Below, in pieces: positions 6,994 to 16,832 of a stretch of 64,000 nt of DNA (the first letter of the stretch is position 1; each line of letters begins with the position of its first letter). The notes beneath the pieces are model-generated. The model saw nothing but the letters and a program-made list of their open reading frames with translations. It was not told the origin of the DNA and did not search any database. Both the position numbers and the translations under genes were made by a program. Location: the IMG/VR virus record IMGVR_UViG_3300042350_002797, positions 1-64,000 of that record. The stretch is one strand, 5' to 3'.

Positions 6994-8409
6994 TCATGGG
7001 TCAGTTGGCAGATTACTCAATAGTTGTCTTAATTTACTGCTTTCGACCTGTACTTTACTAACAGACACACTGATACCTTCAGTAGGATCAGAATTAACTG
7101 TACTATTTCTTTGTAAGTTGTTCAATATTTGACTGCTACGGCTAGTGGTATCTGCCTCTGTTTGCCCTTCTTCACCTGGGTCAGTAATTCTCAATGTATC
7201 AATATCAAAGTCTAAGTCAATTTTCATACCTACACCACTGCTGCTACGAGTTTTCATTAATTGAATTTGATACTTACCGCGTTCACGCATAGCACGACTG
7301 GTAAAGATACCAAACACATTATCCGCTGTCTGGATCTTACTAAGTCCGCCTGAAATATGACTGTGATCGTATTCTACTTCTTCTACTGCACCTCGATTCA
7401 ACTGTGCCGCTGTGACCAGCACACACTGTTTCTCCATAGCCAAGTTACGCAGCTCTTCGCTGACATACTTGTCTTTGACAAATAAGTTTTCTGCTGAAAT
7501 TTTTCTACTTTGAGGCATCAACAAGTCTAGATAATCGACTAGCAGTACATCTACCTTACGTCCTAGTTTGATTTCATATTCTTTAAGATAACTTCTTATA
7601 TCATTGGCTGTTTTGCCGCTGGGCATGTATTTGACTTGATACGTTCCAGATTTTTTTCCAATGACCTTAACTTTCATTTCAACATCATCAATATTTTTAA
7701 AAATATCTCTAGTAGGTATTTCAGTAATCATGCTATCAATACGCATACTGACCAATTCCTCACTAAGTTCTAATGTAAGATATACTACATTCATTCCTTG
7801 TAGTGCCCAGTTAACTCCAAGATTAGCTAAGAATAAACTTTTACCTGCACCTGATCCGCCAGCAAAGATATTCAATTCGCCTCGATTCATACCTCCGAAC
7901 AATCTTTTATCCACAGTTTGCCAACCTGTAGTCATTTGTCCATTTTTATCTTTTATTCGCATTAGTCTACTTCTCGGATCTTCAAAGTAGTCAGTGCCCA
8001 TGTCTTTAGTTAGTCCTACTTGCACTGCCTGCTTGACTAATTCTTCTACTGGGCCATATTCTCCTTTTTCTAACAAGTCAGCACTTTTTAAAATAGCCTG
8101 TTCTAATCCTTTATGTCTAATAAAAGTTTCAAAGTCTTGTAACAGCCAATCGTAGTGTTCTTCTTTCAAATCTCCTGGAGATTTTAAATCAGATTTTGTA
8201 GCCGCATTTACTATTTCATATGTAGGTAGTACGCTATGCTCTGATACATAATCGTTAATAAATTTAGCAGTGTTTTGTAATTTTCTATCAAACAACTCAT
8301 GATGAAAAATGCTTTGGCATCTTACAAAAGTTTCTGCATCATTCAACATCATTTCTAAGTAAAGATGTTGTATATCATATCCGTAGTCTGCGTTTTGTCT
8401 TGTAGTCAT
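6994..8409 (-). CDS. gp41: DnaB-family replicative helicase (T4 gp41-like)
   Basis: Walker A GGSGAGKS, LTLELSEE, LLVDYLDL, TAAQLNR, KTRSSSGVG. Confidence 0.93.
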   Translation of the reverse strand: MTTRQNADYGYDIQHLYLEMMLNDAETFVRCQSIFHHELFDRKLQNTAKFINDYVSEHSVLPTYEIVNAATKSDLKSPGDLKEEHYDWLLQDFETFIRHKGLEQAILKSADLLEKGEYGPVEELVKQAVQVGLTKDMGTDYFEDPRSRLMRIKDKNGQMTTGWQTVDKRLFGGMNRGELNIFAGGSGAGKSLFLANLGVNWALQGMNVVYLTLELSEELVSMRIDSMITEIPTRDIFKNIDDVEMKVKVIGKKSGTYQVKYMPSGKTANDIRSYLKEYEIKLGRKVDVLLVDYLDLLMPQSRKISAENLFVKDKYVSEELRNLAMEKQCVLVTAAQLNRGAVEEVEYDHSHISGGLSKIQTADNVFGIFTSRAMRERGKYQIQLMKTRSSSGVGMKIDLDFDIDTLRITDPGEEGQTEADTTSRSSQILNNLQRNSTVNSDPTEGISVSVSKVQVESSKLRQLLSNLPTDP

Positions 8410-9383
8410 ATTTTATTATATTTTATCTCTATGTGTTTAGTATCTTCGTTTGTTTGATAATTTACATGATTTTTAGTATGTGCCAATACTGCTCCAATTG
8501 CACTACTAGCATCGCCTGGCCAAGGTAAACTCCAAATGCCTCTCCATTGGTGTCTTAGTTGTCGATTAAATTTACTATTGTATGCACAGCCGCCCATATA
8601 AACAAGATTTCTAAAATTAGTTAAATTTCTAGCTTTAACCATTATGTAATCCATTTGTTCTTCAAATACTTTTTGAACTGCGGCGGCGATATCGCATTTA
8701 TCTTGATCAGTTAAGTTATAGTCAAAAGGCCAATTATATACACCTTTATGTAGATTATATTTTAGCACTGCTGGTTTTTTAAAATAGTCTAGCACAGTAT
8801 CATAGTATATAAATGGATTACCCTTATCGCTTAATTTTTGTAAAAAATGTTCTTGTGCAGCGGGTCTAAGTCCAATCAAATCTGTAAAGGCACTATAGAA
8901 TATACCTAAACTATTTGGATAGCTTTCGCTCCACAATTTTTCTAAATTCCTGCCATGCCCACTCCATATGCTTATAGTTTCAAATTCTCCTATAGCATCT
9001 ACAACGACCACGGCTGCTCTATTAAAATTACTAGTATAATACCCTGCGGCAGCATGACTATGATGGTGTGGTGTATAGATTATAGGGCAGTCAATATTAA
9101 ATTTTCTAAGATATACACTAGGTATATTGTCAATACTAAATGCTTCTTTATATTGTCCTGCTGTTAGTTGACGTAGTTTTTTTAAAAATGGACGTTCATA
9201 CCAATATACAGTTTCAGGTTCTCCGTATATTGTTATAGCATGATGTATAATTTCTTGATTTAGATAATGATCTCCTTGTATGTGTGTAAAGTCGCTACTT
9301 CTTCTATGCCATACAGGTTCGTTGTCTCTGAACACACATATGCTAGCATCGTGGTTTAGTGCATTAATACCCCATACAATCAT
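8406..9383 (-). CDS. Carbamoyltransferase (NodU/CmcH family), N-terminal Kae1-like domain only
   Basis: GINALNHDAS, HHHSHAAAGY, VVDAIGE, MGGCAYN, GDASSAIGA; no GPRALGNRS C-domain. Confidence 0.8.
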   Translation of the reverse strand: MIVWGINALNHDASICVFRDNEPVWHRRSSDFTHIQGDHYLNQEIIHHAITIYGEPETVYWYERPFLKKLRQLTAGQYKEAFSIDNIPSVYLRKFNIDCPIIYTPHHHSHAAAGYYTSNFNRAAVVVVDAIGEFETISIWSGHGRNLEKLWSESYPNSLGIFYSAFTDLIGLRPAAQEHFLQKLSDKGNPFIYYDTVLDYFKKPAVLKYNLHKGVYNWPFDYNLTDQDKCDIAAAVQKVFEEQMDYIMVKARNLTNFRNLVYMGGCAYNSKFNRQLRHQWRGIWSLPWPGDASSAIGAVLAHTKNHVNYQTNEDTKHIEIKYNKI

Positions 9384-9505: not shown

Positions 9506-10474
9506 TTAAGCCTCAAACCATTTTTTTGATAGCAGTTTTATCTTCAATCCTGAAGTTTCTTTAGATCGAATTATACTGTATAATGTTGCTAGTCTTCCGT
9601 ACTTTAATAATGCTTCGTTAGCATCTTTAATATCCGGATCCCAGTTAGGAAAACTTACACTCCAATTATTTTCTATTGCTTGATCTACTAACTTTTTTCC
9701 AGCTGAATCTCTGTCTGGTAAAATAATTACTTCTCTTTTAAGTTGATTAATTAGAGTTTTTTGTTGATCACTTATTTCACTACCTAGTATTGCTACGCCG
9801 TCGATACTAATTGCATCAAACGGTCCTTCGCACACTATTACATATTTACGATTTTCTTTTTGATTATCAAAATTAAACACATATCCTGGTTGTTGTTCCG
9901 AAATGTATTTAGGTTTACCATCACGCAACAGCCTAGCCGTAAACCCTACTAAATTTTTATTAAAGTAAAAAGGAACAATTAATCTATTAGGATATGCAGG
10001 GCTCCAATACCATTCGTAATCATCGAGATAAAATCCTCGATTAGCAATATATTCTATCGCTAAATTCATATCATCGTGATACTCTGCTTCTCCTATTTTT
10101 ACACTATCAGGAGGTAATATTTTATCAATAAATTTTGGTAGAATGTCGAATTTTGATTTGTAATCCGAATTTTCTTTTAATCTAAGTGCTTCTAAACTGC
10201 ATTTTGAAATTAAATCGTCTGGTACATTTAACCAGCGCATCAATTTTCGAAATTTTGTAGTTACTATTCTTCCAGGTTGCCAACTAGTTTTAAATCCGCA
10301 GTTAAAACAATGATAGCTAACTCCTTCATTAATCATCATACCTCCACGCTGTCTAGTATCAGAGGAAGTACCGTTATGATGACAGCAGACAGCATTAAAA
10401 CTTATCCATCCGCTGGGAGTCTTTTTTCTTCTAGAAGGCAAGTGTAAGCTGATTGTATCTATGACTAGACTCAT
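9506..10474 (-). CDS. gp61: DNA primase (T4 gp61-like)
   Basis: Zn-binding CCHH...CFNC; TOPRIM CEGPFD and PDRD. Confidence 0.92.
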   Translation of the reverse strand: MSLVIDTISLHLPSRRKKTPSGWISFNAVCCHHNGTSSDTRQRGGMMINEGVSYHCFNCGFKTSWQPGRIVTTKFRKLMRWLNVPDDLISKCSLEALRLKENSDYKSKFDILPKFIDKILPPDSVKIGEAEYHDDMNLAIEYIANRGFYLDDYEWYWSPAYPNRLIVPFYFNKNLVGFTARLLRDGKPKYISEQQPGYVFNFDNQKENRKYVIVCEGPFDAISIDGVAILGSEISDQQKTLINQLKREVIILPDRDSAGKKLVDQAIENNWSVSFPNWDPDIKDANEALLKYGRLATLYSIIRSKETSGLKIKLLSKKWFEA

Positions 10475-10483
10475 AGATATATT

Positions 10484-11296
10484 TTACGATATTACTAATA
10501 TTTTGTCAATAGATCCGGTGTTCGCTGTATCCGGAAGATATTTAATTCTTAACCAACTTATATTATTACTGTAATCGGTTATTTCATTATACACTTTACT
10601 AACAACATCAGTAGAATTATTGATATTAAAAGTTTCTAAATCTGACCAATTAGTTGCTGCACTAACTACTGCATCGGTAGTTATTTGTACAGTTACTTCA
10701 GCATCGAAGTTAGTTAATCGAAATTCTAATTTAATTTGATGCGTGTCATTGACATCATTTCTTGGATTAACTTCTACAGACGAACTGTAATAAGTGGTTA
10801 TATCTGGGTTTACTGAATCGTCGATTAGGTATATGAATTTGTCTATAATTTGAGCAGGAACAGATTCTGGTACAACACCATTCAGTAAATCAATTATACC
10901 AGTAGCGCCAAACTGACTATCTCCGTATAGCAGTGTTTTTGTACCGTCATCGTTTAAAATGTAAAGGCTAAATTTTAAGAACTGAGGCTTTATATAATCA
11001 ATTTGTTCTGCATAAATTGTCATAGTAGCTAGTCCTGTAGTGTTAATTACAGGCTCTACGTCGACTGTTAAAACTTCGGTATTGTAATGATCTAAAATAA
11101 CACATTTCAGATTATAATTTGTAATTGATATACGTTTTTGATCAGCATTTCGCACGTCAAATTCCACGACGTTTTTCACGCCTTTGTACAATTTTATTCT
11201 TCGTTGGTACACAGGTCTATACTCCACAGGATATGACGCCAAATCGGCAACTACCGAAATTCTATTTGAATATAAATAACTTGAAATTTTTTGCAT
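10484..11296 (-). CDS. Hypothetical beta-rich protein, probably structural (start re-called to ATG 11296)
   Basis: TAAATA at 11305-11310 lies 8 nt before MQKISS; longer call overlaps the opposite gene. Confidence 0.65.
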   Translation of the reverse strand: MQKISSYLYSNRISVVADLASYPVEYRPVYQRRIKLYKGVKNVVEFDVRNADQKRISITNYNLKCVILDHYNTEVLTVDVEPVINTTGLATMTIYAEQIDYIKPQFLKFSLYILNDDGTKTLLYGDSQFGATGIIDLLNGVVPESVPAQIIDKFIYLIDDSVNPDITTYYSSSVEVNPRNDVNDTHQIKLEFRLTNFDAEVTVQITTDAVVSAATNWSDLETFNINNSTDVVSKVYNEITDYSNNISWLRIKYLPDTANTGSIDKILVIS

Positions 11297-11309
11297 CTTA
11301 ACTGTATTT

Positions 11310-11687
11310 ATGGCGAAATTAAGAGAAAACATACAAGAACAATTACCCTTTATTTCTGTGCTTCATTATGGAGAAAGCGAATACGTTGGGATTATAATAA
11401 ATCAAGATCAATACGTAACTAGTTTTTTTGATTTGAGCATGTTAAAAACTGCTGAAGATAAAGCTGGATTATTAGAGATCGGAGAAATTTGGTGGTGGGA
11501 ATCTAACAGACAGGTTCCTATAAACATATTTCTTAGAAAGGAAATAGAACCTTATCGATACGCTATTAAAACCTTTAATAGCAAAGATGTCAGAATAATG
11601 CTCGGGCCAGTAGTGAATTTATTAAATTTAACTATAAAACGAGTTAAAAGAAAAAGTGTTCAGTTAGTAAGAGCCCCAAAACGTTAA
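11310..11687 (+). CDS. Hypothetical protein
   Basis: 125-aa ORF; TATAAATA at 11271-11278 upstream. Confidence 0.7.
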   Translation: MAKLRENIQEQLPFISVLHYGESEYVGIIINQDQYVTSFFDLSMLKTAEDKAGLLEIGEIWWWESNRQVPINIFLRKEIEPYRYAIKTFNSKDVRIMLGPVVNLLNLTIKRVKRKSVQLVRAPKR

Positions 11688-12262
11688 CTAAATTCATAAC
11701 TTACTTTTTCACATATTAAGTTCATTTGTACTACAATTGCCTGAGCATAAGCTATGGCATGCGCCTTTTTAAAATAATATTCATCATTTTCTGGTTTTTT
11801 CCAAACCTCTTCTAAGATCGTCGACCATGGCTCTCCAACTAGGTATCTCTTCGCTGGTCGTATCACTGCTAATACTGCTGCTAATTGTTCTATCGTTATT
11901 GGTTTCATTTGACGTAATATAGAACCATGCCCGTTTACGTGAAAGAGTAAGTCGATGAACTCGTCTTGTTCTAGAAGATCCCATAATGGTTCCGTCTCCA
12001 TCAATTTTTTTAAATGTTCTTCGTTTTTTACATCTTTGTAAACACTAACATTTAGCAAGTCTATTTTAAAATATCCTCGTTCTTCCGCAGTTTTATAATC
12101 AATGTTTGATAGATTTGTTATAGGATTAGAGGGTATAGGTTGCACATAGATACCGGTATTATGTGGTACTAACAAATCATTTTGTAATCGACTAGCTCTA
12201 ATATGTTTAATATGTTTAAGAGCTAATTCACGATCTGCAAAGTCTATATCGATATCAGGCAT
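11684..12262 (-). CDS. Miniature DNA polymerase III alpha (DnaE/family C)-like catalytic-core protein
   Basis: PDIDIDF, PHNTGIYV, GYFKIDLLNV, YYFKKAHAIAYA correspond to DnaE palm/fingers motifs. Confidence 0.75.
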   Translation of the reverse strand: MPDIDIDFADRELALKHIKHIRASRLQNDLLVPHNTGIYVQPIPSNPITNLSNIDYKTAEERGYFKIDLLNVSVYKDVKNEEHLKKLMETEPLWDLLEQDEFIDLLFHVNGHGSILRQMKPITIEQLAAVLAVIRPAKRYLVGEPWSTILEEVWKKPENDEYYFKKAHAIAYAQAIVVQMNLICEKVSYEFS

Positions 12263-12447
12263 TATTGTATAACTTCAGTTTCAAATAAAAGTAAAGGTAA
12301 ATTTTTTGATAAAAATTCTGCATAGTCAGTTGCCTCGTCTATGTTTTCAAAACCTTCTAATTTCACATAGATTGAATCGTCTTTTTCGTTCACTAAAACT
12401 TGCATGGATAATTCTGTGTTAGTGCTTCCTGAAACAACGTAGGTCAT
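12262..12447 (-). CDS. Small acidic hypothetical protein
   Basis: Overlapping start/stop with both neighbours. Confidence 0.55.
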   Translation of the reverse strand: MTYVVSGSTNTELSMQVLVNEKDDSIYVKLEGFENIDEATDYAEFLSKNLPLLLFETEVIQ

Positions 12448-13136
12448 AGTCCAGCCTCCTTAATCACCTGTTTTACCAGCTCTATATCTTGCTTAGAACT
12501 TTTAAATTTTTTAGACCAAAATATAGGGTCTATAATATTACTTATGGCAGATAGCTGAGTATCGTCTAGCTGATCTAAAAGTTTTTTACCTGAATTTGAA
12601 TTTAAAATTAGCCAAGGACTTACTTTTCCATCTTTAATATCAAACATGGCTCTATTTGTGCTAACATAATTAAAATAATGATTCCACATACTGTTATTCT
12701 TTTCAGCCCATAAGCTCATATGTTTGATTGATCTTTCTAATGCAGTTTCTACAGATTCTGTTTGTATTAGATTTACAATGTATTTTTCATAGAGTTCGTC
12801 TCTGCACCAATGATCGATTTTAACTCCGCTCTTAACTATCCATTCTATAAATTTATTTGGATATAACGGATTTATGTTTGAAACAAAACTGCCAAATTTA
12901 ACAAATGCATTATAATACGGACTTTTTGAGAATTCTGAATAAGTTTTTGATTCTGTAGATTTTTGAGCGATTTCATAGAATTTGTTAAAGGTATAAAATC
13001 CCATAACTACATGTTTTTCATTCTGTGCAAGATGTCTTCTTTTTTGCTCGCACATATGTACTATCAAAGTCTTTTCTTTAGTAAACTTTGTTCGACAATG
13101 TACACAAACAAATTCTTGCAAGATTTCTGCTATCAT
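12444..13136 (-). CDS. Hypothetical protein with N-terminal C2H/C zinc finger
   Basis: CVHC...HMC; ATGA coupling. Confidence 0.75.
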   Translation of the reverse strand: MIAEILQEFVCVHCRTKFTKEKTLIVHMCEQKRRHLAQNEKHVVMGFYTFNKFYEIAQKSTESKTYSEFSKSPYYNAFVKFGSFVSNINPLYPNKFIEWIVKSGVKIDHWCRDELYEKYIVNLIQTESVETALERSIKHMSLWAEKNNSMWNHYFNYVSTNRAMFDIKDGKVSPWLILNSNSGKKLLDQLDDTQLSAISNIIDPIFWSKKFKSSKQDIELVKQVIKEAGL

Positions 13137-13612
13137 TTAAAATAGTCTTTAATTTGTTTATCACTATACCCAAACAATTTTGCTTGTTCTATACATTCTT
13201 TTTCGGTAGTTAGTGTAGCAAGTAATTCTAATTCGTCAATTTTTTTAGTTGGGTGAACATCTAATAAGAATTTATATATTTTACTATTAGAATTTTTCTT
13301 TCGTTTAAATCCTATCCATTCATGATAAAAAATCTTTTTTGATTCATGACTACACATGCATAGTAATTGCCAAAGCAATTTTGGATGCTTTTGCAAAACA
13401 TTCCAATGTTTATTAAAATATTCATTGACAGTTAATAGATAGTGTTCTTGTATATTTCTGTCATTAATTTTAACATTACTGATATATCTGTTTAAGATGA
13501 AAAATTCGCTTTTTAATGCTTTTTTTTGATCGTCATTTATGTCATCCCATAAAGACTTTACATTTAAATCTACTGCTGCCAATTTTTCTTTTAATTCAAT
13601 TTTATCACTCAT
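13133..13612 (-). CDS. Possible clamp-loader small subunit (T4 gp62-like)
   Basis: FILNRYIS...HPKLLWQLL...HEWIGFK pattern and size resemble gp62-like proteins; weak. Confidence 0.45.
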   Translation of the reverse strand: MSDKIELKEKLAAVDLNVKSLWDDINDDQKKALKSEFFILNRYISNVKINDRNIQEHYLLTVNEYFNKHWNVLQKHPKLLWQLLCMCSHESKKIFYHEWIGFKRKKNSNSKIYKFLLDVHPTKKIDELELLATLTTEKECIEQAKLFGYSDKQIKDYFK

Positions 13613-14120: not shown

Positions 14121-14328
14121 CGATGCTGAGTCTGTATATCATTTTTACTCGGGAAACAGCTTTTTGTAAAGCAGGATTTGTTTTTGCTGCCAATCTAATT
14201 TCATTCCAAAGAATGTGATCTTGTAAATCTTCTATACCTGAAGATTGAATGATTGTTCTTTTTTCTTTGCCAAACTCTCTTTCGTAAACAGTTTTCCCTT
14301 TATCTGGGCTTTCGTAAATTTTTGTCAT
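14107..14328 (-). CDS. Small hypothetical protein
   Basis: 73-aa ORF overlapping both neighbours in-operon. Confidence 0.65.
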   Translation of the reverse strand: MTKIYESPDKGKTVYEREFGKEKRTIIQSSGIEDLQDHILWNEIRLAAKTNPALQKAVSRVKMIYRLSIDDPK

Positions 14329-14885
14329 TTATATGCTACCACTCTACTACACATTGCAGTTTTAGGATATTTATTTGGTTCAACTACTGTTTTACTAAAT
14401 CCTGTATCCTTCAATAGTTTACTTAAACTATCTGCGCTGTATCCCCATTTATGCAGCATTGCAACGTTTTGATATTTTCCTATATTACCAAATATTCCTG
14501 CAACACCTTGCTTTAATATTTTTTTATTATCACTGTAAATTCTACTAGGATCGGATACTATAAACTTACACATTTTTAATAGATCTGGCCATTCTGTGGC
14601 TACTGATCCTCCTGGTTTTAAAATTCTATACCATTCTTTTAACATGCCAGGAACTTGATTTGGCATGATATGTTCTATCACATGAACACTGAGGATTTCG
14701 TCTACGGTGTCGTTAGGTATAGGATATTGATCTGTTAGATTATGTATAGTTATACCAGATTGCCCTATGCAGTAGTCTCCATCTACATTTATCCATCCTT
14801 CGTAAAGATTCGGTCCGCATCCTAGATGCAATCTTATAGGCAATTGTTTTTGTTGATAATTTATTATTTCTTCAGTTAAAGTCAT
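14325..14885 (-). CDS. Class I SAM-dependent methyltransferase
   Basis: LHLGCG motif I, HVIEHI, RILKPGG. Confidence 0.85.
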   Translation of the reverse strand: MTLTEEIINYQQKQLPIRLHLGCGPNLYEGWINVDGDYCIGQSGITIHNLTDQYPIPNDTVDEILSVHVIEHIMPNQVPGMLKEWYRILKPGGSVATEWPDLLKMCKFIVSDPSRIYSDNKKILKQGVAGIFGNIGKYQNVAMLHKWGYSADSLSKLLKDTGFSKTVVEPNKYPKTAMCSRVVAYK

Positions 14886-15837
14886 GTTTAATACTTTTAA
14901 AAAAATTACACCATTTATCTGTAATTTTTTCTACAGAATAATTTTCAACAACATATTTTTGACCATTTGAAATCATTTCTAGAATATGTTTCCTATTATG
15001 TTTATCTAAAGCCCATGCTATTCCTTTGGCATAGTTTTTTGTCCAAATAAAATCTTTGAATTCATCGTAGCTTTGAAGTCTGCTAGTAATTACAAATTTT
15101 CCACTGATTAAAGAATCTATTAAACGTGTAGAACTTTTAGTTATTGTACGGTAATTTTCCTCTACAGGAATTAATACAATATCAGTATCTTTCAAATAAT
15201 GACCTTGCGTTTCCCAGTTCCATTCTACAAAATTAATTTTATCCATGTTAACAAACTGATGATCAGGGTTTTTTAATCTCTGTCTTGTTTTTTCCTCAAA
15301 TCTTTTAGCCTTTCCTGTTACAATAGATAATTTGTATCGTCCAATATTTCTTTCAAGAAAAGACCAAATTTCCGTCCAGTTAACATACCCTAAACTACTA
15401 TTGCTACCAAACCATAAAATTTTTATTGTTTTTCCTGGTGAAAATTCTGGAGTTAATACAGGGCGTTCTACAGGATCAGGGATAACAGTAGCTATTTTTC
15501 CAGTTCTGTTTAGTATTTCATCAGCCATTGTACGACTGTTACAGGTAATATAATCCGCTTCTATTGCACACGGTAGTAGTGCATCATCTTCGTCAAATTT
15601 GTTATCACATATGTCAAATACAGTAATAGCTTTTTTTCTTTTAGATTCTAATATGTTTTCTAATTGAGAAAATTTAATCCATACTGCGATATCATTTTCT
15701 TTAAGATGTGTTGTATTAGTTCCTATAGTAGAACTAATATTTCTTTTTTTTAATTCTTCAGAAATTAATCTTCCTCGCAGACGATGGCTTGCTCTTCTTT
15801 CTGAAAATTTACTAGTTAAAAAATGTACATTACTCAT
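14872..15837 (-). CDS. Glycosyltransferase (GT-B-like)
   Basis: FDICD, LWFGS, DIVLIP, KSSTRLIDSLISGKFVI pattern. Confidence 0.7.
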   Translation of the reverse strand: MSNVHFLTSKFSERRASHRLRGRLISEELKKRNISSTIGTNTTHLKENDIAVWIKFSQLENILESKRKKAITVFDICDNKFDEDDALLPCAIEADYITCNSRTMADEILNRTGKIATVIPDPVERPVLTPEFSPGKTIKILWFGSNSSLGYVNWTEIWSFLERNIGRYKLSIVTGKAKRFEEKTRQRLKNPDHQFVNMDKINFVEWNWETQGHYLKDTDIVLIPVEENYRTITKSSTRLIDSLISGKFVITSRLQSYDEFKDFIWTKNYAKGIAWALDKHNRKHILEMISNGQKYVVENYSVEKITDKWCNFFKSIKHDFN

Positions 15838-16492
15838 CAGGTTTTATAAAAATGAAATCTGCTTTTCCTACTTTTTGTATGTTCTTATACCCTAACGAAT
15901 TTAAAAGTTTTTCTGGATCAGGCATAGTGCTATTTTGTCGAGTGTGTACTCTTACTTTATTTTCAATTAAAATAACAGGGGAGTTATTTTTAAGAAACTC
16001 TGTGGCTCCATCTAATAAATATCCTTCGTGACTGTCTACATCAATTTTAACAAAATCAATATCTTTAAGATTTAGATCATCTAATTTAATAGTATTCACT
16101 TTTATTGTAATCTGATCTGCTAAATCTTTTTCTTCTAATGTTGATACCCATGCGCTAAAATTGTTATTTACAAAATTTTGAATACCATTTTTATTACTGA
16201 TACCAACATTTTCAATTTTGCAATTTCTGATATTGCGAATTTCTAAATTTTTATTACAACACTCAAACATTTCTTGATTAGCTTCGAAACCTAAAACATT
16301 TTTAAATTTGGTCGACATAGCGATAGTCGAGTCTCCGATCCATGTTCCAATATCAATAGCGTTATCAAATTTTCTTACATATTTAAGAGCTTCTGCAATA
16401 GCATTAACACATGGAAAGTTTTCTTCTTCTACCATTAAAGCAACTCTATCTTTAGTAGAATCTGCGCAATACCAATTACCTATTTTTTTCAT
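15830..16492 (-). CDS. FkbM-family methyltransferase
   Basis: IDIGTWIG, GFEAN, DFVKIDVDSHE. Confidence 0.85.
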   Translation of the reverse strand: MKKIGNWYCADSTKDRVALMVEEENFPCVNAIAEALKYVRKFDNAIDIGTWIGDSTIAMSTKFKNVLGFEANQEMFECCNKNLEIRNIRNCKIENVGISNKNGIQNFVNNNFSAWVSTLEEKDLADQITIKVNTIKLDDLNLKDIDFVKIDVDSHEGYLLDGATEFLKNNSPVILIENKVRVHTRQNSTMPDPEKLLNSLGYKNIQKVGKADFIFIKPDE

Positions 16493-16832
16493 TATGGTAT
16501 CCTACAGTTTCTCTTTCAATGTCTTCGTGATCGAATTCCGCCCAATAAAGTTCGAAAGCTACAGTATCTTCTAGTGCCTCAAACTGATGAAATTCACCGG
16601 GGGCAACTTTAGTATACATACCGTTCATCAAAACAGTTTCGTCAACAAGATCATAATTGTTTTTCCAGACACGTATAATTAACGCACCTTTTTCAACAAA
16701 AAATCCATTCCACTTGAACTTGTGTTTATGTTTAGAACAGACACCGCCTTTCTTAATATCGATCCGATGAAATTCTAAAACACCGTTGGCTTCTAAAAGC
16801 TCTGTTTGCCCCCATACTTTTCCTGCAATCAT
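16476..16832 (-). CDS. Cupin (sugar isomerase-like)
   Basis: KVWG, CSKHKH, PGEFHQFEA. Confidence 0.75.
   Translation of the reverse strand: MIAGKVWGQTELLEANGVLEFHRIDIKKGGVCSKHKHKFKWNGFFVEKGALIIRVWKNNYDLVDETVLMNGMYTKVAPGEFHQFEALEDTVAFELYWAEFDHEDIERETVGYHNEKNR

What the first reader, a model, noticed from the sequence alone, without database searches (positions are those of the whole stretch)
11684..12262. 192-aa minimal family C polymerase with the catalytic triad intact
DnaE is normally over 1000 aa. This ORF retains PDIDIDF (two catalytic Asp, cf. E. coli PDFDVDF), KIDLL (third Asp, cf. KFDFL), an HxxG motif and FKKAHAIAYA (cf. FNKSHSAAYA), but lacks PHP, most of the thumb, clamp-binding and OB domains. 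The flanking ORFs show no PHP or OB motifs that I can see, and start/stop overlaps look tidy rather than decayed. It could be one subunit of a split replicase or a stand-alone nucleotidyltransferase, co-transcribed with a Zn-finger protein and a possible clamp-loader subunit.
Basis: partly seen in the sequence, partly recalled or inferred. Interest (0 to 1): 0.7.

Follow-up and report, generated by a model that had tools for sequence, protein, structure and literature searches.

The report
Half of a split mini-DnaE polymerase
This 192-residue gene of a lake-water jumbo phage is the C-terminal half of a stripped-down, two-piece version of the bacterial replicative polymerase core; its partner gene lies 180 kb away, and the arrangement was described by comparative genomics in 2021 but has never been tested at the bench.

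Summary
Window 11684-12262 (-) is an intact, strongly conserved 192-aa ORF. It carries the three catalytic Asp of family C polymerases (D3, D5, D68) and other Pol III alpha active-site residues (K66, R135-P136, Y162, F164, H168).

It is not a polymerase on its own, because it lacks the nucleotide-binding 'GS' half of the palm. That half is a separate 161-aa gene at 191,877-192,362 (-) of the same 364.5-kb phage genome. It ends ...EFLR exactly where this ORF starts, MPDIDIDF.

- The two halves are predicted to bind: ipSAE 0.91, best control 0.00.
- They co-occur in relatives.
- They exist naturally fused as 375-376-aa proteins.

The genome has no PHP, thumb, index-finger, clamp-binding or OB pieces. 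It does encode a full family B polymerase in a 901-aa open frame.

This matches the 'minimal split DNA polymerase III alpha' of group 2.2 jumbo phages described by Iyer et al. 2021. It is therefore a new member of a known, biochemically untested kind.

The most likely function is an auxiliary, template-dependent DNA polymerase heterodimer working beside the phage's family B replicase. The Zn-finger neighbour is real and conserved. The 'clamp-loader subunit' neighbour is unproven.

The parts
11684..12262 (-). C-terminal half of the split minimal Pol III alpha (192 aa). It holds the second part of the palm and remnants of the fingers.
   Evidence: - phrog_11778, E 5.7e-68.
- AF2 model pLDDT 96.8.
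- VIA-align Z 9.8 to Taq Pol III alpha 3e0d_A 461-841 and Z 9.1 to E. coli 2hnh 400-781, with 184-188 residues aligned. The next unrelated hit is Z 3.5.
- The Foldseek top 18 hits are all family C polymerases.
12239..12259 (-). Motif PDIDIDF (residues 2-8). D3 and D5 are the metal-binding Asp equivalent to E. coli D401 and D403; D7 corresponds to D405.
   Evidence: - D3 and D5 are present in 86 of 87 divergent representatives and D7 in 85 of 87.
- phmmer aligns residues 1-12 to M. tuberculosis DnaE1 413-424, 'MPDIDIDFDDRR'.
- The structural alignment starts at E. coli residue 400.
12152..12163 (-). HNTG (H34-G37), the palm strand that resumes where the thumb would be inserted. The correspondence to E. 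coli HAGG is proposed, not shown residue by residue.
   Evidence: - H34 is present in 85 of 87 and G37 in 86 of 87 representatives.
- 188 model residues span about 380 residues of Pol III alpha, so two insertions are missing, and the first lies here.
- The residue-level equivalence to HAGG is inferred.
12059..12067 (-). K66-I-D68. D68 is the third catalytic Asp (E. coli D555). K66 corresponds to K553, which contacts the primer-terminal phosphate.
   Evidence: - K66 and D68 are invariant in 87 of 87 representatives.
- The profile alignment to 2hnh puts KID on K553-F-D555.
11855..11860 (-). R135-P136, equivalent to E. coli R639-P640, which lie within 4 A of the templating nucleotide.
   Evidence: - The profile alignment places ...LiRP on ...LFRP640.
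- R135 is present in 86 of 87 and P136 in 87 of 87 representatives.
- The contact list is from the 2026 cryo-EM preprint.
11744..11779 (-). Y162...F164-K-K-A-H168...Y172-A173, the helix-loop-helix that lines the dNTP pocket (E. coli Y754, F756, N757, H760). H168 corresponds to the proposed steric-gate His.
   Evidence: - Profile alignment to E. coli 740-769.
- H168 is present in 86 of 87 and K165 in 81 of 87 representatives.
12262..12447 (-). 61-aa ORF immediately upstream, with its stop overlapping the start of the C-half. Function unknown.
   Evidence: - TAATG overlap.
- Homologues lie upstream of the C-half in 49 of 80 related loci.
- No family match.
12444..13136 (-). Conserved 230-aa neighbour with an N-terminal C2H2-like zinc finger (phrog_11058). 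Function unknown.
   Evidence: - phrog_11058, E 2.8e-62.
- Weak zf-C2H2 match at residues 4-52.
- Phage-only clusters in the Atlas.
- 34% identical to PA5oct gp265 at the same position.
- Present in 79 of 80 loci.
13133..13612 (-). Conserved 159-aa helical neighbour (phrog_11758). Its identity as a gp62-like clamp-loader small subunit is only a lead.
   Evidence: - The Atlas places it near clusters in which some members carry PF16790, score 0.92.
- Negative tests: Pfam on 31 family members, profile against PDB, hhalign against T4 gp62.
- 36% identical to PA5oct gp266.
- Present in 74 of 80 loci.
11310..11687 (+). Convergent 125-aa gene (phrog_11637) overlapping the 3' end of the C-half by 4 nt. 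It is a conserved member of the block.
   Evidence: - phrog_11637, E 3e-30.
- 43% identical to PA5oct gp263 in the same orientation.
- Metatranscriptome contigs cover 11296-11672.
9506..10474 (-). DnaG/Toprim-type primase, part of the conserved neighbourhood.
   Evidence: - Toprim_2, E 3.8e-8.
- phrog_47, E 5.9e-44.
- Same relative position in Atu_ph07, PA5oct and 121Q.
6994..8409 (-). DnaB-like replicative helicase, part of the conserved neighbourhood.
   Evidence: - DnaB_C, E 7.8e-20.
- phrog_19, E 1.3e-69.
- Synteny.

Best explanation
**What it is (shown)**
- The ORF encodes the C-terminal subunit of a two-polypeptide, minimal family C (Pol III alpha / DnaE-type) nucleotidyltransferase.
- The N-terminal subunit is 161 aa and lies outside the window at genome position 191,877-192,362 (-). 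It supplies the first palm helices and the strand carrying the invariant G-R-G-S-S motif, which corresponds to E. coli R362-G363-S364 (the nucleotide-binding 'GS' motif).
- This ORF supplies the strand with D3 and D5, the strand with K66 and D68, and two finger remnants. These remnants carry the equivalents of the template-contacting R639-P640 and of the dNTP-pocket residues Y754, F756 and H760.
- The break falls in the loop between E. coli R390-F-L and P400-D401. It is at the same residue in essentially all relatives.

**How the two pieces fit (predicted)**
- They associate non-covalently and rebuild one Pol-beta-like palm.
- N-half strand 124-128 pairs with C-half strand 6-8.

**What it does (inferred)**
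- The heterodimer binds Mg2+ through D3, D5 and D68 and adds dNTPs to a primer in a template-directed way.
- Without a thumb, index finger, PHP, clamp-binding or OB domains it should be distributive and of low efficiency on its own.
- It therefore probably acts as an accessory polymerase beside the phage's family B replicase, in primer extension, gap filling or repair.
- It may be helped by conserved neighbours or by replisome proteins. The C-half gene sits in a conserved block next to primase and DnaB. The N-half gene sits four genes upstream of the gp44-like clamp loader.
For: **Identity**
- phrog_11778.
- The profile hits E. coli and Taq Pol III alpha at E 3e-6, with K66/D68 on K553/D555.
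- High-confidence model (pLDDT 96.8) that matches only family C polymerases.

**The partner**
- PF07733 match above its cut-off at 191.9 kb: 42.4 bits against 23.9.
- The ORF ends ...EFLR.
- phrog_11127, E 3.9e-36.
- The profile aligns to E. coli 320-392, including GRGS.
- Its model's top 13 Foldseek hits are family C polymerases.

**The two act as one unit**
- The termini are fixed across relatives: 'M(P)DIDIDF' and '...EFLR'.
- Complex prediction: ipSAE 0.91 (median of three runs) against a best control of 0.00, about 155 contacts, run agreement of at least 98%, partner pLDDT of at least 91. That mark was reached by 58 of 80 solved complexes and 2 of 110 mismatched pairs.
- Natural fused proteins of 375-376 aa exist (P0310, P0391, P0392). 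One sits at the C-half locus.
- The fused clade is nested among stand-alone C-halves in the tree.
- The N-half is present in 4 of 5 long related contigs.
- Both halves are found in Atu_ph07, PA5oct, 121Q and others, 31-182 kb apart.

**Still catalytic**
- D3 and D5 86/87, D7 85/87, K66, D68 and P136 87/87, R135 and H168 86/87; N-half G129, R130, G131 and S132 45/45.
- dN/dS 0.15.

**Template and dNTP use**
- The residues kept are those listed within 4 A of dGTP or of the templating base in E. coli Pol III, plus the steric-gate His.

**Accessory rather than main replicase**
- A family B polymerase in a 901-aa open frame is present.
- No PHP, no other Pol III pieces and no DnaQ-type exonuclease.

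**Context and prior description**
- Genomic context.
- Prior independent description: Iyer et al. 2021.
Against: - No biochemical data exist for any member; I found none in the paper library.
- The index finger is absent. It closes over the dNTP and carries R709, K714 and K715. E. coli 642-739 is replaced here by about 11 residues.
- The thumb is absent too. Efficient templated synthesis is therefore not guaranteed.
- E. coli R390 aligns with a conserved Glu (E158) in the N-half.
- The complex score may partly reflect the model's memory of intact Pol III structures (caveat stated).
- Metatranscriptome contigs did not cover the body of the gene.
Confidence: 0.6

Rival explanations
1. The heterodimer is a nucleotidyltransferase but not a templated DNA polymerase. 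It might add untemplated tails, or make a small nucleotide product used in phage-host conflict. In this reading only the Pol-beta-like catalytic core has been kept.
For: - The thumb, index finger and all downstream DNA- and clamp-binding domains are missing.
- The index-finger basic residues that grip the triphosphate in Pol III are absent.
- Pol-beta-fold enzymes include many non-polymerase transferases (general knowledge).
Against: - The equivalents of R639-P640, which contact the templating base, are nearly invariant. So are the primer-phosphate Lys (K553 equivalent) and the sugar-gate His (H760 equivalent).
- Both genes sit in replication neighbourhoods: primase and helicase for one, clamp loader for the other.
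Confidence: 0.2
2. The 192-aa protein works alone, or with its local neighbours (the Zn-finger protein and the 159-aa protein), as a stand-alone minimal enzyme. The distant 161-aa protein would be unrelated in function.
For: - It holds all three catalytic Asp.
- It folds confidently on its own in silico.
- It lies in a tightly conserved gene block.
Against: - It lacks the GS-motif strand, which contacts the sugar and the beta and gamma phosphates of the dNTP.
- The missing strand is exactly what the 161-aa protein ends with.
- Fused natural versions exist.
- The predicted interface is large and specific.
- The halves co-occur.
Confidence: 0.07
3. The pair has lost catalysis and serves as a scaffold or decoy, for instance by binding a host or phage replisome partner.
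For: - Most of the parent enzyme has been lost.
- No activity has ever been shown.
Against: Catalytic and substrate-contact residues are conserved at 97-100% across representatives that are only about 31-58% identical to this protein. A pure scaffold would not be expected to keep them.
Confidence: 0.05
4. The ORF is a pseudogene fragment of a full-length dnaE, or an assembly artefact.
For: It is 192 aa long, against more than 1000 aa for DnaE.
Against: - 80 of 80 related loci have the same ORF length.
- dN/dS is 0.15.
- There are thousands of clusters of the same size.
- Identical DNA is held in 16 DNA runs.
- No relative has a long gene at this locus.
Confidence: 0.01

Closest known systems
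Split minimal DNA polymerase III alpha of 'group 2.2' jumbo phages (Iyer, Anantharaman, Krishnan, Burroughs & Aravind 2021, Viruses 13:63; PHROG families 11778 and 11127)
   Same: - Two stand-alone proteins encoded by distant genes: an N-terminal NTP-binding unit, and a C-terminal Mg2+- and template-binding unit.
- No other Pol III domains.
- A family B polymerase is also present.
- The host genome is a RaK2 / 121Q / PA5oct / Atu_ph07-type jumbo phage.
   Different: - Nothing differs in kind. This copy comes from an uncultivated lake-water phage and is at most 54% identical to any cultured-phage copy.
- Four points here were not in the passages of that paper that I read: the natural fused 375-aa forms, the control-backed complex prediction, the mapping onto the 2026 dNTP and template contact list, and the linkage of each half to a replisome module.
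Bacterial Pol III alpha (DnaE; E. coli 2HNH, T. aquaticus 2HPI / 3E0D) and PolC (3F2B)
   Same: - Pol-beta-like palm with D401, D403 and D555 and K553.
- GS motif R362-G363-S364, supplied here in trans.
- R639-P640, and the Y754 / F756 / H760 helix-loop-helix.
   Different: - 353 aa in two chains, against 1160 or more aa in one chain.
- No PHP.
- No thumb, about E. coli 433-510 (inferred).
- No index finger, about E. coli 642-739.
- Nothing beyond about residue 781: no clamp-binding, HhH, OB or tau-binding parts.
- The C-half fails Pfam's finger-domain cut-off, 12.8 bits against 22.
Cyanobacterial split DnaE joined by a split intein (Synechocystis DnaE-n / DnaE-c; from my own knowledge, not checked here)
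   Same: A family C polymerase catalytic subunit encoded by two genes far apart on the genome.
   Different: - No intein is present. The N-half ends at ...EFLR and the C-half starts at MPDIDIDF, and homology to Pol III accounts for the whole of both proteins.
- No Hint or intein family is detected.
- The split site lies inside the palm rather than in the fingers.
- The pieces presumably stay non-covalent.
Two-polymerase replisomes (Firmicute PolC + DnaE; eukaryotic Pol alpha + delta/epsilon; general knowledge)
   Same: A main replicase is accompanied by a second, less processive polymerase encoded with replication genes. Here the C-half is adjacent to the primase and helicase genes.
   Different: This is an analogy only. 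No primer hand-off has been shown here. The main enzyme is family B and the helper is a fragmentary family C core.

Membership tests
Family C DNA polymerase catalytic subunit (Pol III alpha / DnaE / PolC) | Pol-beta-like palm with three catalytic acidic residues (E. coli D401, D403, D555) | tested here: met
   - D3 and D5 are present in 86/87 and D68 in 87/87 representatives.
- The profile alignment puts D68 on D555.
- Structural alignment to 2hnh 400-781 and 3e0d 461-841, Z 9.1-9.8.
Family C DNA polymerase catalytic subunit (Pol III alpha / DnaE / PolC) | GS nucleotide-binding motif (R362-G363-S364) on the first palm strand of the same chain | tested here: not met
   The motif is absent from the 192-aa ORF. 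It is present, and invariant, in the separate 161-aa N-half encoded 180 kb away.
Family C DNA polymerase catalytic subunit (Pol III alpha / DnaE / PolC) | N-terminal PHP domain | tested here: not met
   PF02811 finds nothing in the whole 364.5-kb genome at E<=1, while 14 of 14 control genomes match.
Family C DNA polymerase catalytic subunit (Pol III alpha / DnaE / PolC) | Thumb domain and complete fingers, including the index finger (R709, K714, K715) | tested here: not met
   - 188 model residues span about 380 residues of Pol III alpha.
- The profile alignment jumps from E. coli 641 to 740.
- PF17657 scores 12.8 bits against a cut-off of 22.
Family C DNA polymerase catalytic subunit (Pol III alpha / DnaE / PolC) | Clamp-binding, HhH, OB and tau-binding C-terminal region | tested here: not met
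   - The protein ends at the equivalent of about E. coli 781.
- The full-length DnaE profile phrog_405 finds only the two halves in the genome.
Family C DNA polymerase catalytic subunit (Pol III alpha / DnaE / PolC) | Template-directed DNA synthesis | not testable with these tools
   Only indirect evidence is available: the template- and dNTP-contact residues are kept.
Split minimal Pol III alpha of group 2.2 jumbo phages (Iyer et al. 2021) | C-terminal unit of about 190 aa that starts at the DxDxD strand | tested here: met
   - phrog_11778, residues 3-186 on profile positions 8-194 of 197.
- 96 of 120 close relatives start 'MPDIDIDFA'.
Split minimal Pol III alpha of group 2.2 jumbo phages (Iyer et al. 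2021) | Separate N-terminal NTP-binding unit encoded at a distant locus of the same genome | tested here: met
   - 161-aa ORF at genome 191,877-192,362 (-), PF07733 at E 1.1e-11, phrog_11127 at E 3.9e-36.
- It lies 180 kb from the C-half.
Split minimal Pol III alpha of group 2.2 jumbo phages (Iyer et al. 2021) | Accompanied by a family B polymerase and T4-like replication genes, with no other Pol III domains | tested here: met
   - PF00136 in a 901-aa open frame.
- DnaB and primase.
- gp44-like clamp loader.
- No PHP and no further phrog_405 matches.
Split minimal Pol III alpha of group 2.2 jumbo phages (Iyer et al. 2021) | The two units reconstitute one catalytic module | tested here: inconclusive
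   - This is predicted only: ipSAE 0.91 against a best control of 0.00.
- It is supported by natural fusions and by co-occurrence.
- No physical evidence exists.
Intein-split DnaE | Split-intein halves at the break point | tested here: not met
   - No residues are left unaccounted for at ...EFLR or at MPDIDIDF.
- No intein or Hint family match.
T4 gp62-type clamp-loader small subunit (for the neighbour at 13133-13612) | Match to PF16790 or to T4 gp62 | tested here: inconclusive
   - The Atlas lead scores 0.92 and shares 217 features with clusters in which some members carry PF16790.
- Negative tests: 0 of 31 family members hit PF16790, no PDB hit, hhalign probability 0.4%, no genome match.

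The most novel reading that the evidence does not exclude
The mini Pol III may be a true second replisomal polymerase of these phages.

- Its halves are each genetically tied to a replisome module. The C-half sits with primase, DnaB helicase and a conserved block of the Zn-finger and 159-aa proteins. The N-half sits with the gp44-like clamp loader.
- Conserved neighbours would supply in trans the DNA-gripping functions of the lost thumb and index finger.
- The enzyme would extend primase-made primers before hand-off to the family B polymerase.

This would be a viral parallel to DnaE/PolC or to Pol alpha/delta. As Iyer et al. suggested, it could also be a living model of the ancestral family C core.
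Probability: 0.2. Interest if true: 0.75.

Novelty: new member of a known kind. Interest (0 to 1): 0.4.

Why it matters
At 161 + 192 aa this is the smallest known natural form of the family C polymerase catalytic core, and it comes in two chains.

- If it is active, it defines the minimal parts needed for Pol III-type catalysis: palm, GS motif and one helix-loop-helix, with no thumb and no index finger.
- It would also give a compact system for structural and engineering work.
- It bears on how bacterial replicases were assembled from simpler modules.
- It is very abundant.
- It is universal in a large clade of jumbo phages, including candidates for phage therapy such as PA5oct, RaK2 and 121Q. 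No experiment on it has been published that I could find.

For this scan the practical message is that the finding is genuine but already described. Its missing half was simply outside the window.

Tried and rejected
1. **Longer gene, pseudogene or misassembly.** Rejected.
2. **Further DnaE pieces in the flanks or elsewhere.** Pfam, PHROGs and NCBIfam on ten flanking ORFs, the whole-genome phrog_405 search and the PHP search found only the N-half at 191.9 kb.
3. **A DnaQ-type proofreader like the one reported for Atu_ph07.** No PF00929 match in this genome.
4. **The 159-aa neighbour as a gp62-like clamp-loader subunit.** There is an Atlas lead. Searches were negative, so this is left open. The 145-aa ORF just after the gp44-like gene also shows no similarity to T4 gp62 by BLASTP.
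5. **A single-chain model of the natural fused protein.** MAFFT twice placed the N-halves under the C-terminal region (A4 and A5). These alignments were discarded, and the second structure job went to the N-half instead.
6. **A first complex job.** I rebuilt the alignment without them.
7. **Single-sequence PDB search.** Too weak, E 0.88. The profile search was needed.
8. **Promoter and terminator scan.** No enrichment over shuffles, so uninformative.
9. **Megablast of 14 kb against cultured phages.** No match. The phage has no close cultured relative.
10. **Metatranscriptome contigs.** Only seven short pieces were laid, none over the body of the gene. This is no real evidence for or against expression.
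11. **Literature search for experiments on the split enzyme.** None found. The PA5oct omics paper does not mention a DNA polymerase.
Full report
**1. What is in the sequence**

Window 11684-12262 on the minus strand is a 192-aa ORF with an ATG start.
- PDIDIDF at residues 2-8
- HNTG at 34-37
- KIDLL at 66-70
- FKKAHAIAYA at 164-173

It is the last gene of a run of minus-strand genes with overlapping stops and starts. Its ATG shares one base with the TAA of a 61-aa ORF (TAATG). The genes upstream overlap by 4 nt.

The window is the first 64 kb of a 364,554-bp IMG/VR virus record that CheckV rates as 100% complete. The last 126 nt of the record repeat nt 46-171, which suggests a closed assembly. 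The same DNA occurs in 16 lake-water metagenome runs.

**2. The ORF is real and under selection**

- It matches PHROG 11778 ('DNA polymerase', a 197-position profile) end to end at E 5.7e-68.
- 96 cultured jumbo-phage records carry a copy at 40-54% identity, 94 of them covering at least 80% of the query. They include Sinorhizobium phage Phosso, Agrobacterium Atu_ph07, Pseudomonas PA5oct, Escherichia 121Q, Cronobacter GAP32, Salicola SCTP-2 and Xanthomonas XaC1.
- In the 5.8-billion-protein collection the search hit its ceiling, with 7,988 clusters. Nearly all of those listed are 188-200 aa long.
- In 80 of 80 related IMG/VR loci the ORF is 186-195 aa, with an in-frame stop 0-40 codons upstream of the start.
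- Pairwise dN/dS over 259 pairs has a median of 0.15.

This is not a pseudogene or an assembly artefact.

**3. Homology to the family C polymerase core**

Single-sequence searches are weak: Pfam finger domain at E 0.077 and PDB at E 0.88.

A profile of 87 representatives, 31-58% identical to this protein, hits E. coli, T. aquaticus and M. tuberculosis Pol III alpha at E 3e-6 to 2e-4. It aligns:
- K66-I-D68 with K553-F-D555
- ...IRP136 with ...FRP640
- F164-K-K-A-H168 with F756-N-K-S-H760

The AlphaFold model is very confident, with pLDDT 96.8. The Foldseek top 18 PDB hits are all family C polymerases. VIA-align gives Z 9.8 to 3e0d_A (461-841), Z 9.6 to PolC 3f2b, and Z 9.1 to E. coli 2hnh (400-781). 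Between 184 and 188 of the 192 residues align, and the next unrelated hit is at Z 3.5.

So 188 residues are spread over about 380 residues of the parent. Two blocks are missing: the thumb, and E. coli 642-739, which is the index finger. Everything after about residue 781 is absent.

**4. The missing half**

Searching the whole genome with PF07733 and with a full-length DnaE profile (phrog_405) found exactly one other piece. It is a 161-aa ORF at 191,877-192,362 (-) that ends ...GVGRGSSVASY...NWQEFLR.

- It belongs to PHROG 11127.
- Its profile aligns to E. coli 320-392, including G-R362-G363-S364.
- An NCBIfam DnaE model aligns residues 14-160.
- Its model's top 13 Foldseek hits are family C polymerases, though at weaker E-values.

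In E. coli the sequence runs ...ERFL(392)-NPERVSM-P(400)DFDVDF. The phage proteins end at ...EFLR and begin at MPDIDIDF. The break is therefore in the loop just before the strand that carries the metal-binding Asp. The termini are fixed across relatives.

The genome has no PHP domain, no other Pol III fragment and no DnaQ-type exonuclease. It does have a family B polymerase in a 901-aa open frame.

**5. Evidence that the two proteins are one enzyme**

- **Complex prediction.** It gives ipSAE 0.91 (median of three runs) against a best control of 0.00. There are about 155 contacts, at least 98% agreement between runs, and partner pLDDT of at least 91. This mark was reached by 58 of 80 solved complexes and 2 of 110 mismatched pairs. 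The tightest contacts pair N-half 124-128 with C-half 6-8, as expected for neighbouring palm strands. The tool warns that such a pass may come from memory of intact Pol III structures.
- **Natural fusions.** Three metagenomic proteins of 375-376 aa join an N-half to a C-half through a short linker (...KEFIKDNKEGIYNIADFDID...). One sits at the C-half locus, with the usual convergent 119-aa gene after it. In a tree of C-half sequences the fused clade (SH-aLRT 99) is nested in a supported clade (SH-aLRT 95) whose other 11 members are stand-alone C-halves. The fusion is therefore most simply secondary, but the tree is unrooted.
- **Co-occurrence.** 4 of 5 long but incomplete related contigs carry both halves. 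Cultured relatives carry both at 31-182 kb apart.

**6. What the active site keeps and what it has lost**

A 2026 cryo-EM preprint lists the E. coli residues within 4 A of dGTP and of the templating nucleotide, and notes that K553A abolishes activity. H760 is the proposed steric gate.

| E. coli residues | Role in E. coli | In the phage enzyme |
|---|---|---|
| R362, G363, S364 | dGTP contact | N-half R130, G131, S132, 45/45 |
| D401, D403 | dGTP contact, metal binding | D3, D5, 86/87 |
| D555, K553 | third catalytic Asp; primer-terminal phosphate | D68, K66, 87/87 |
| R639, P640 | templating nucleotide | R135 86/87; P136 87/87 |
| Y754, F756, H760 | dGTP contact; H760 steric gate | Y162 61/87; F164 73/87; H168 86/87 |
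| R709, K714, K715 | dGTP contact | lost with the index finger |
| R390 | dGTP contact | aligns with a conserved Glu (E158) |

The conservation counts are, and the losses follow.

My reading is that a templated, dNTP-selective chemistry has been kept, while grip on the DNA and on the triphosphate has been reduced. That reading is inference.

**7. Genomic context**

- **C-half block.** The order 159-aa protein, 230-aa Zn-finger protein, 61-aa ORF, C-half, then a convergent 125-aa gene, a virion protein, primase and DnaB is conserved in Atu_ph07, PA5oct and 121Q. The Zn-finger protein is present in 79 and the 159-aa protein in 74 of 80 IMG/VR loci. In this phage a carbamoyltransferase gene is inserted between primase and helicase.
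- **N-half neighbourhood.** The N-half lies four genes upstream of the gp44-like clamp loader, after a GroES-like and a MazG-like gene. The N-half lies a few genes upstream of the clamp loader in Atu_ph07, 121Q and XacN1 as well.
- **The 159-aa protein.** It might be a divergent gp62-type clamp-loader subunit according to the Atlas. Four sequence-based tests were negative.
- **Transcription.** Metatranscriptome contigs at 100% identity touch the 125-aa gene, the 61-aa ORF and the junction with the C-half, but not the gene body. This is weak evidence.

**8. Comparison with what is known**

Iyer et al. [quoted passage not shown] They proposed cooperation with the family B enzyme, or a role in repair. 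Attai et al. 2018 had already annotated the Atu_ph07 N-half as a Pol III alpha subunit. I found no experimental study.

The window's gene meets every defining feature of that class. It fails most defining features of a canonical DnaE: no PHP, thumb, index finger or C-terminal domains, and the GS motif is on another chain. It is also not an intein-split DnaE.

**9. Verdict**

- Novelty: a new member of a known, computationally described kind.
- Identity as the C-terminal half of the split mini Pol III: about 0.95.
- Function as a templated accessory DNA polymerase heterodimer: about 0.6.
- Interest: moderate, 0.4. The system is striking and untested, but already published.

Noticed in passing
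outside the window: own genome 191,877-192,362 (-) = L001 1498-1983 (-): A 161-aa N-terminal half of the split mini Pol III. It carries the invariant GRGSS motif and ends ...EFLR. It is followed by a 79-aa ORF, a GroES-like gene, a MazG-like pyrophosphatase and the gp44-like clamp loader.
   Followed up: yes
metagenomic proteins P0310, P0391, P0392; contig L014 519-1649 (+): Natural single-chain (fused) mini Pol III proteins of 375-376 aa. In the C-half tree they are nested among stand-alone C-halves. This may be a secondary re-fusion of genes that are elsewhere 30-180 kb apart.
   Followed up: partly
window 13133-13612 (-): A conserved 159-aa helical protein. Only a protein-language-model search links it to the T4 gp62 clamp-loader family (PF16790). 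All sequence-profile tests were negative.
   Followed up: partly
window 12444-13136 (-): A phage-specific 230-aa protein with an N-terminal C2H2-like zinc finger (phrog_11058). It sits next to the C-half gene in 79 of 80 related loci and in PA5oct. Its function is unknown, and it is a candidate accessory factor.
   Followed up: partly
window 8406-9383 (-): A NodU/CmcH-type carbamoyltransferase N-terminal domain gene lies between the primase and the DnaB helicase. It is absent from that position in Atu_ph07, PA5oct and 121Q. It may have a role in nucleotide or DNA modification.
   Followed up: no
window 14325-16832 (-): A run of ORFs that look, from their translations only, like methyltransferase, glycosyltransferase, FkbM-type methyltransferase and cupin genes, directly upstream of the replication block. 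They may make a sugar or a modification. I did not run any family search on them.
   Followed up: no
own genome ends (nt 46-171 and the last 126 nt): The last 126 nt of the record repeat nt 46-171. IMG/VR calls the record 'linear', but the assembly probably closes on itself. On a circular map the two polymerase halves lie almost opposite each other, 180.0 and 184.5 kb apart.
   Followed up: partly
L008 5001-5567 (Atu_ph07 NC_042013.1, gp074): The RefSeq CDS for the Atu_ph07 C-half starts 24 codons downstream of the conserved MPD.D.D start. The annotated protein therefore lacks two of the three catalytic Asp. Many E. coli jumbo-phage records likewise show two 'hypothetical protein' features under the match.
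   Followed up: partly
own genome about 166.7-168.0 kb (-) (L006 / L007): The family B DNA polymerase here is in one 901-aa open frame, whereas the Atu_ph07 paper lists two polymerase gene products (gp276, gp277).
   Followed up: no
window 10484-11332 (-): A gene similar to virion structural proteins is embedded between the C-half block and the primase. Its position is conserved in PA5oct, where the product was detected by MS, and in 121Q.
   Followed up: no
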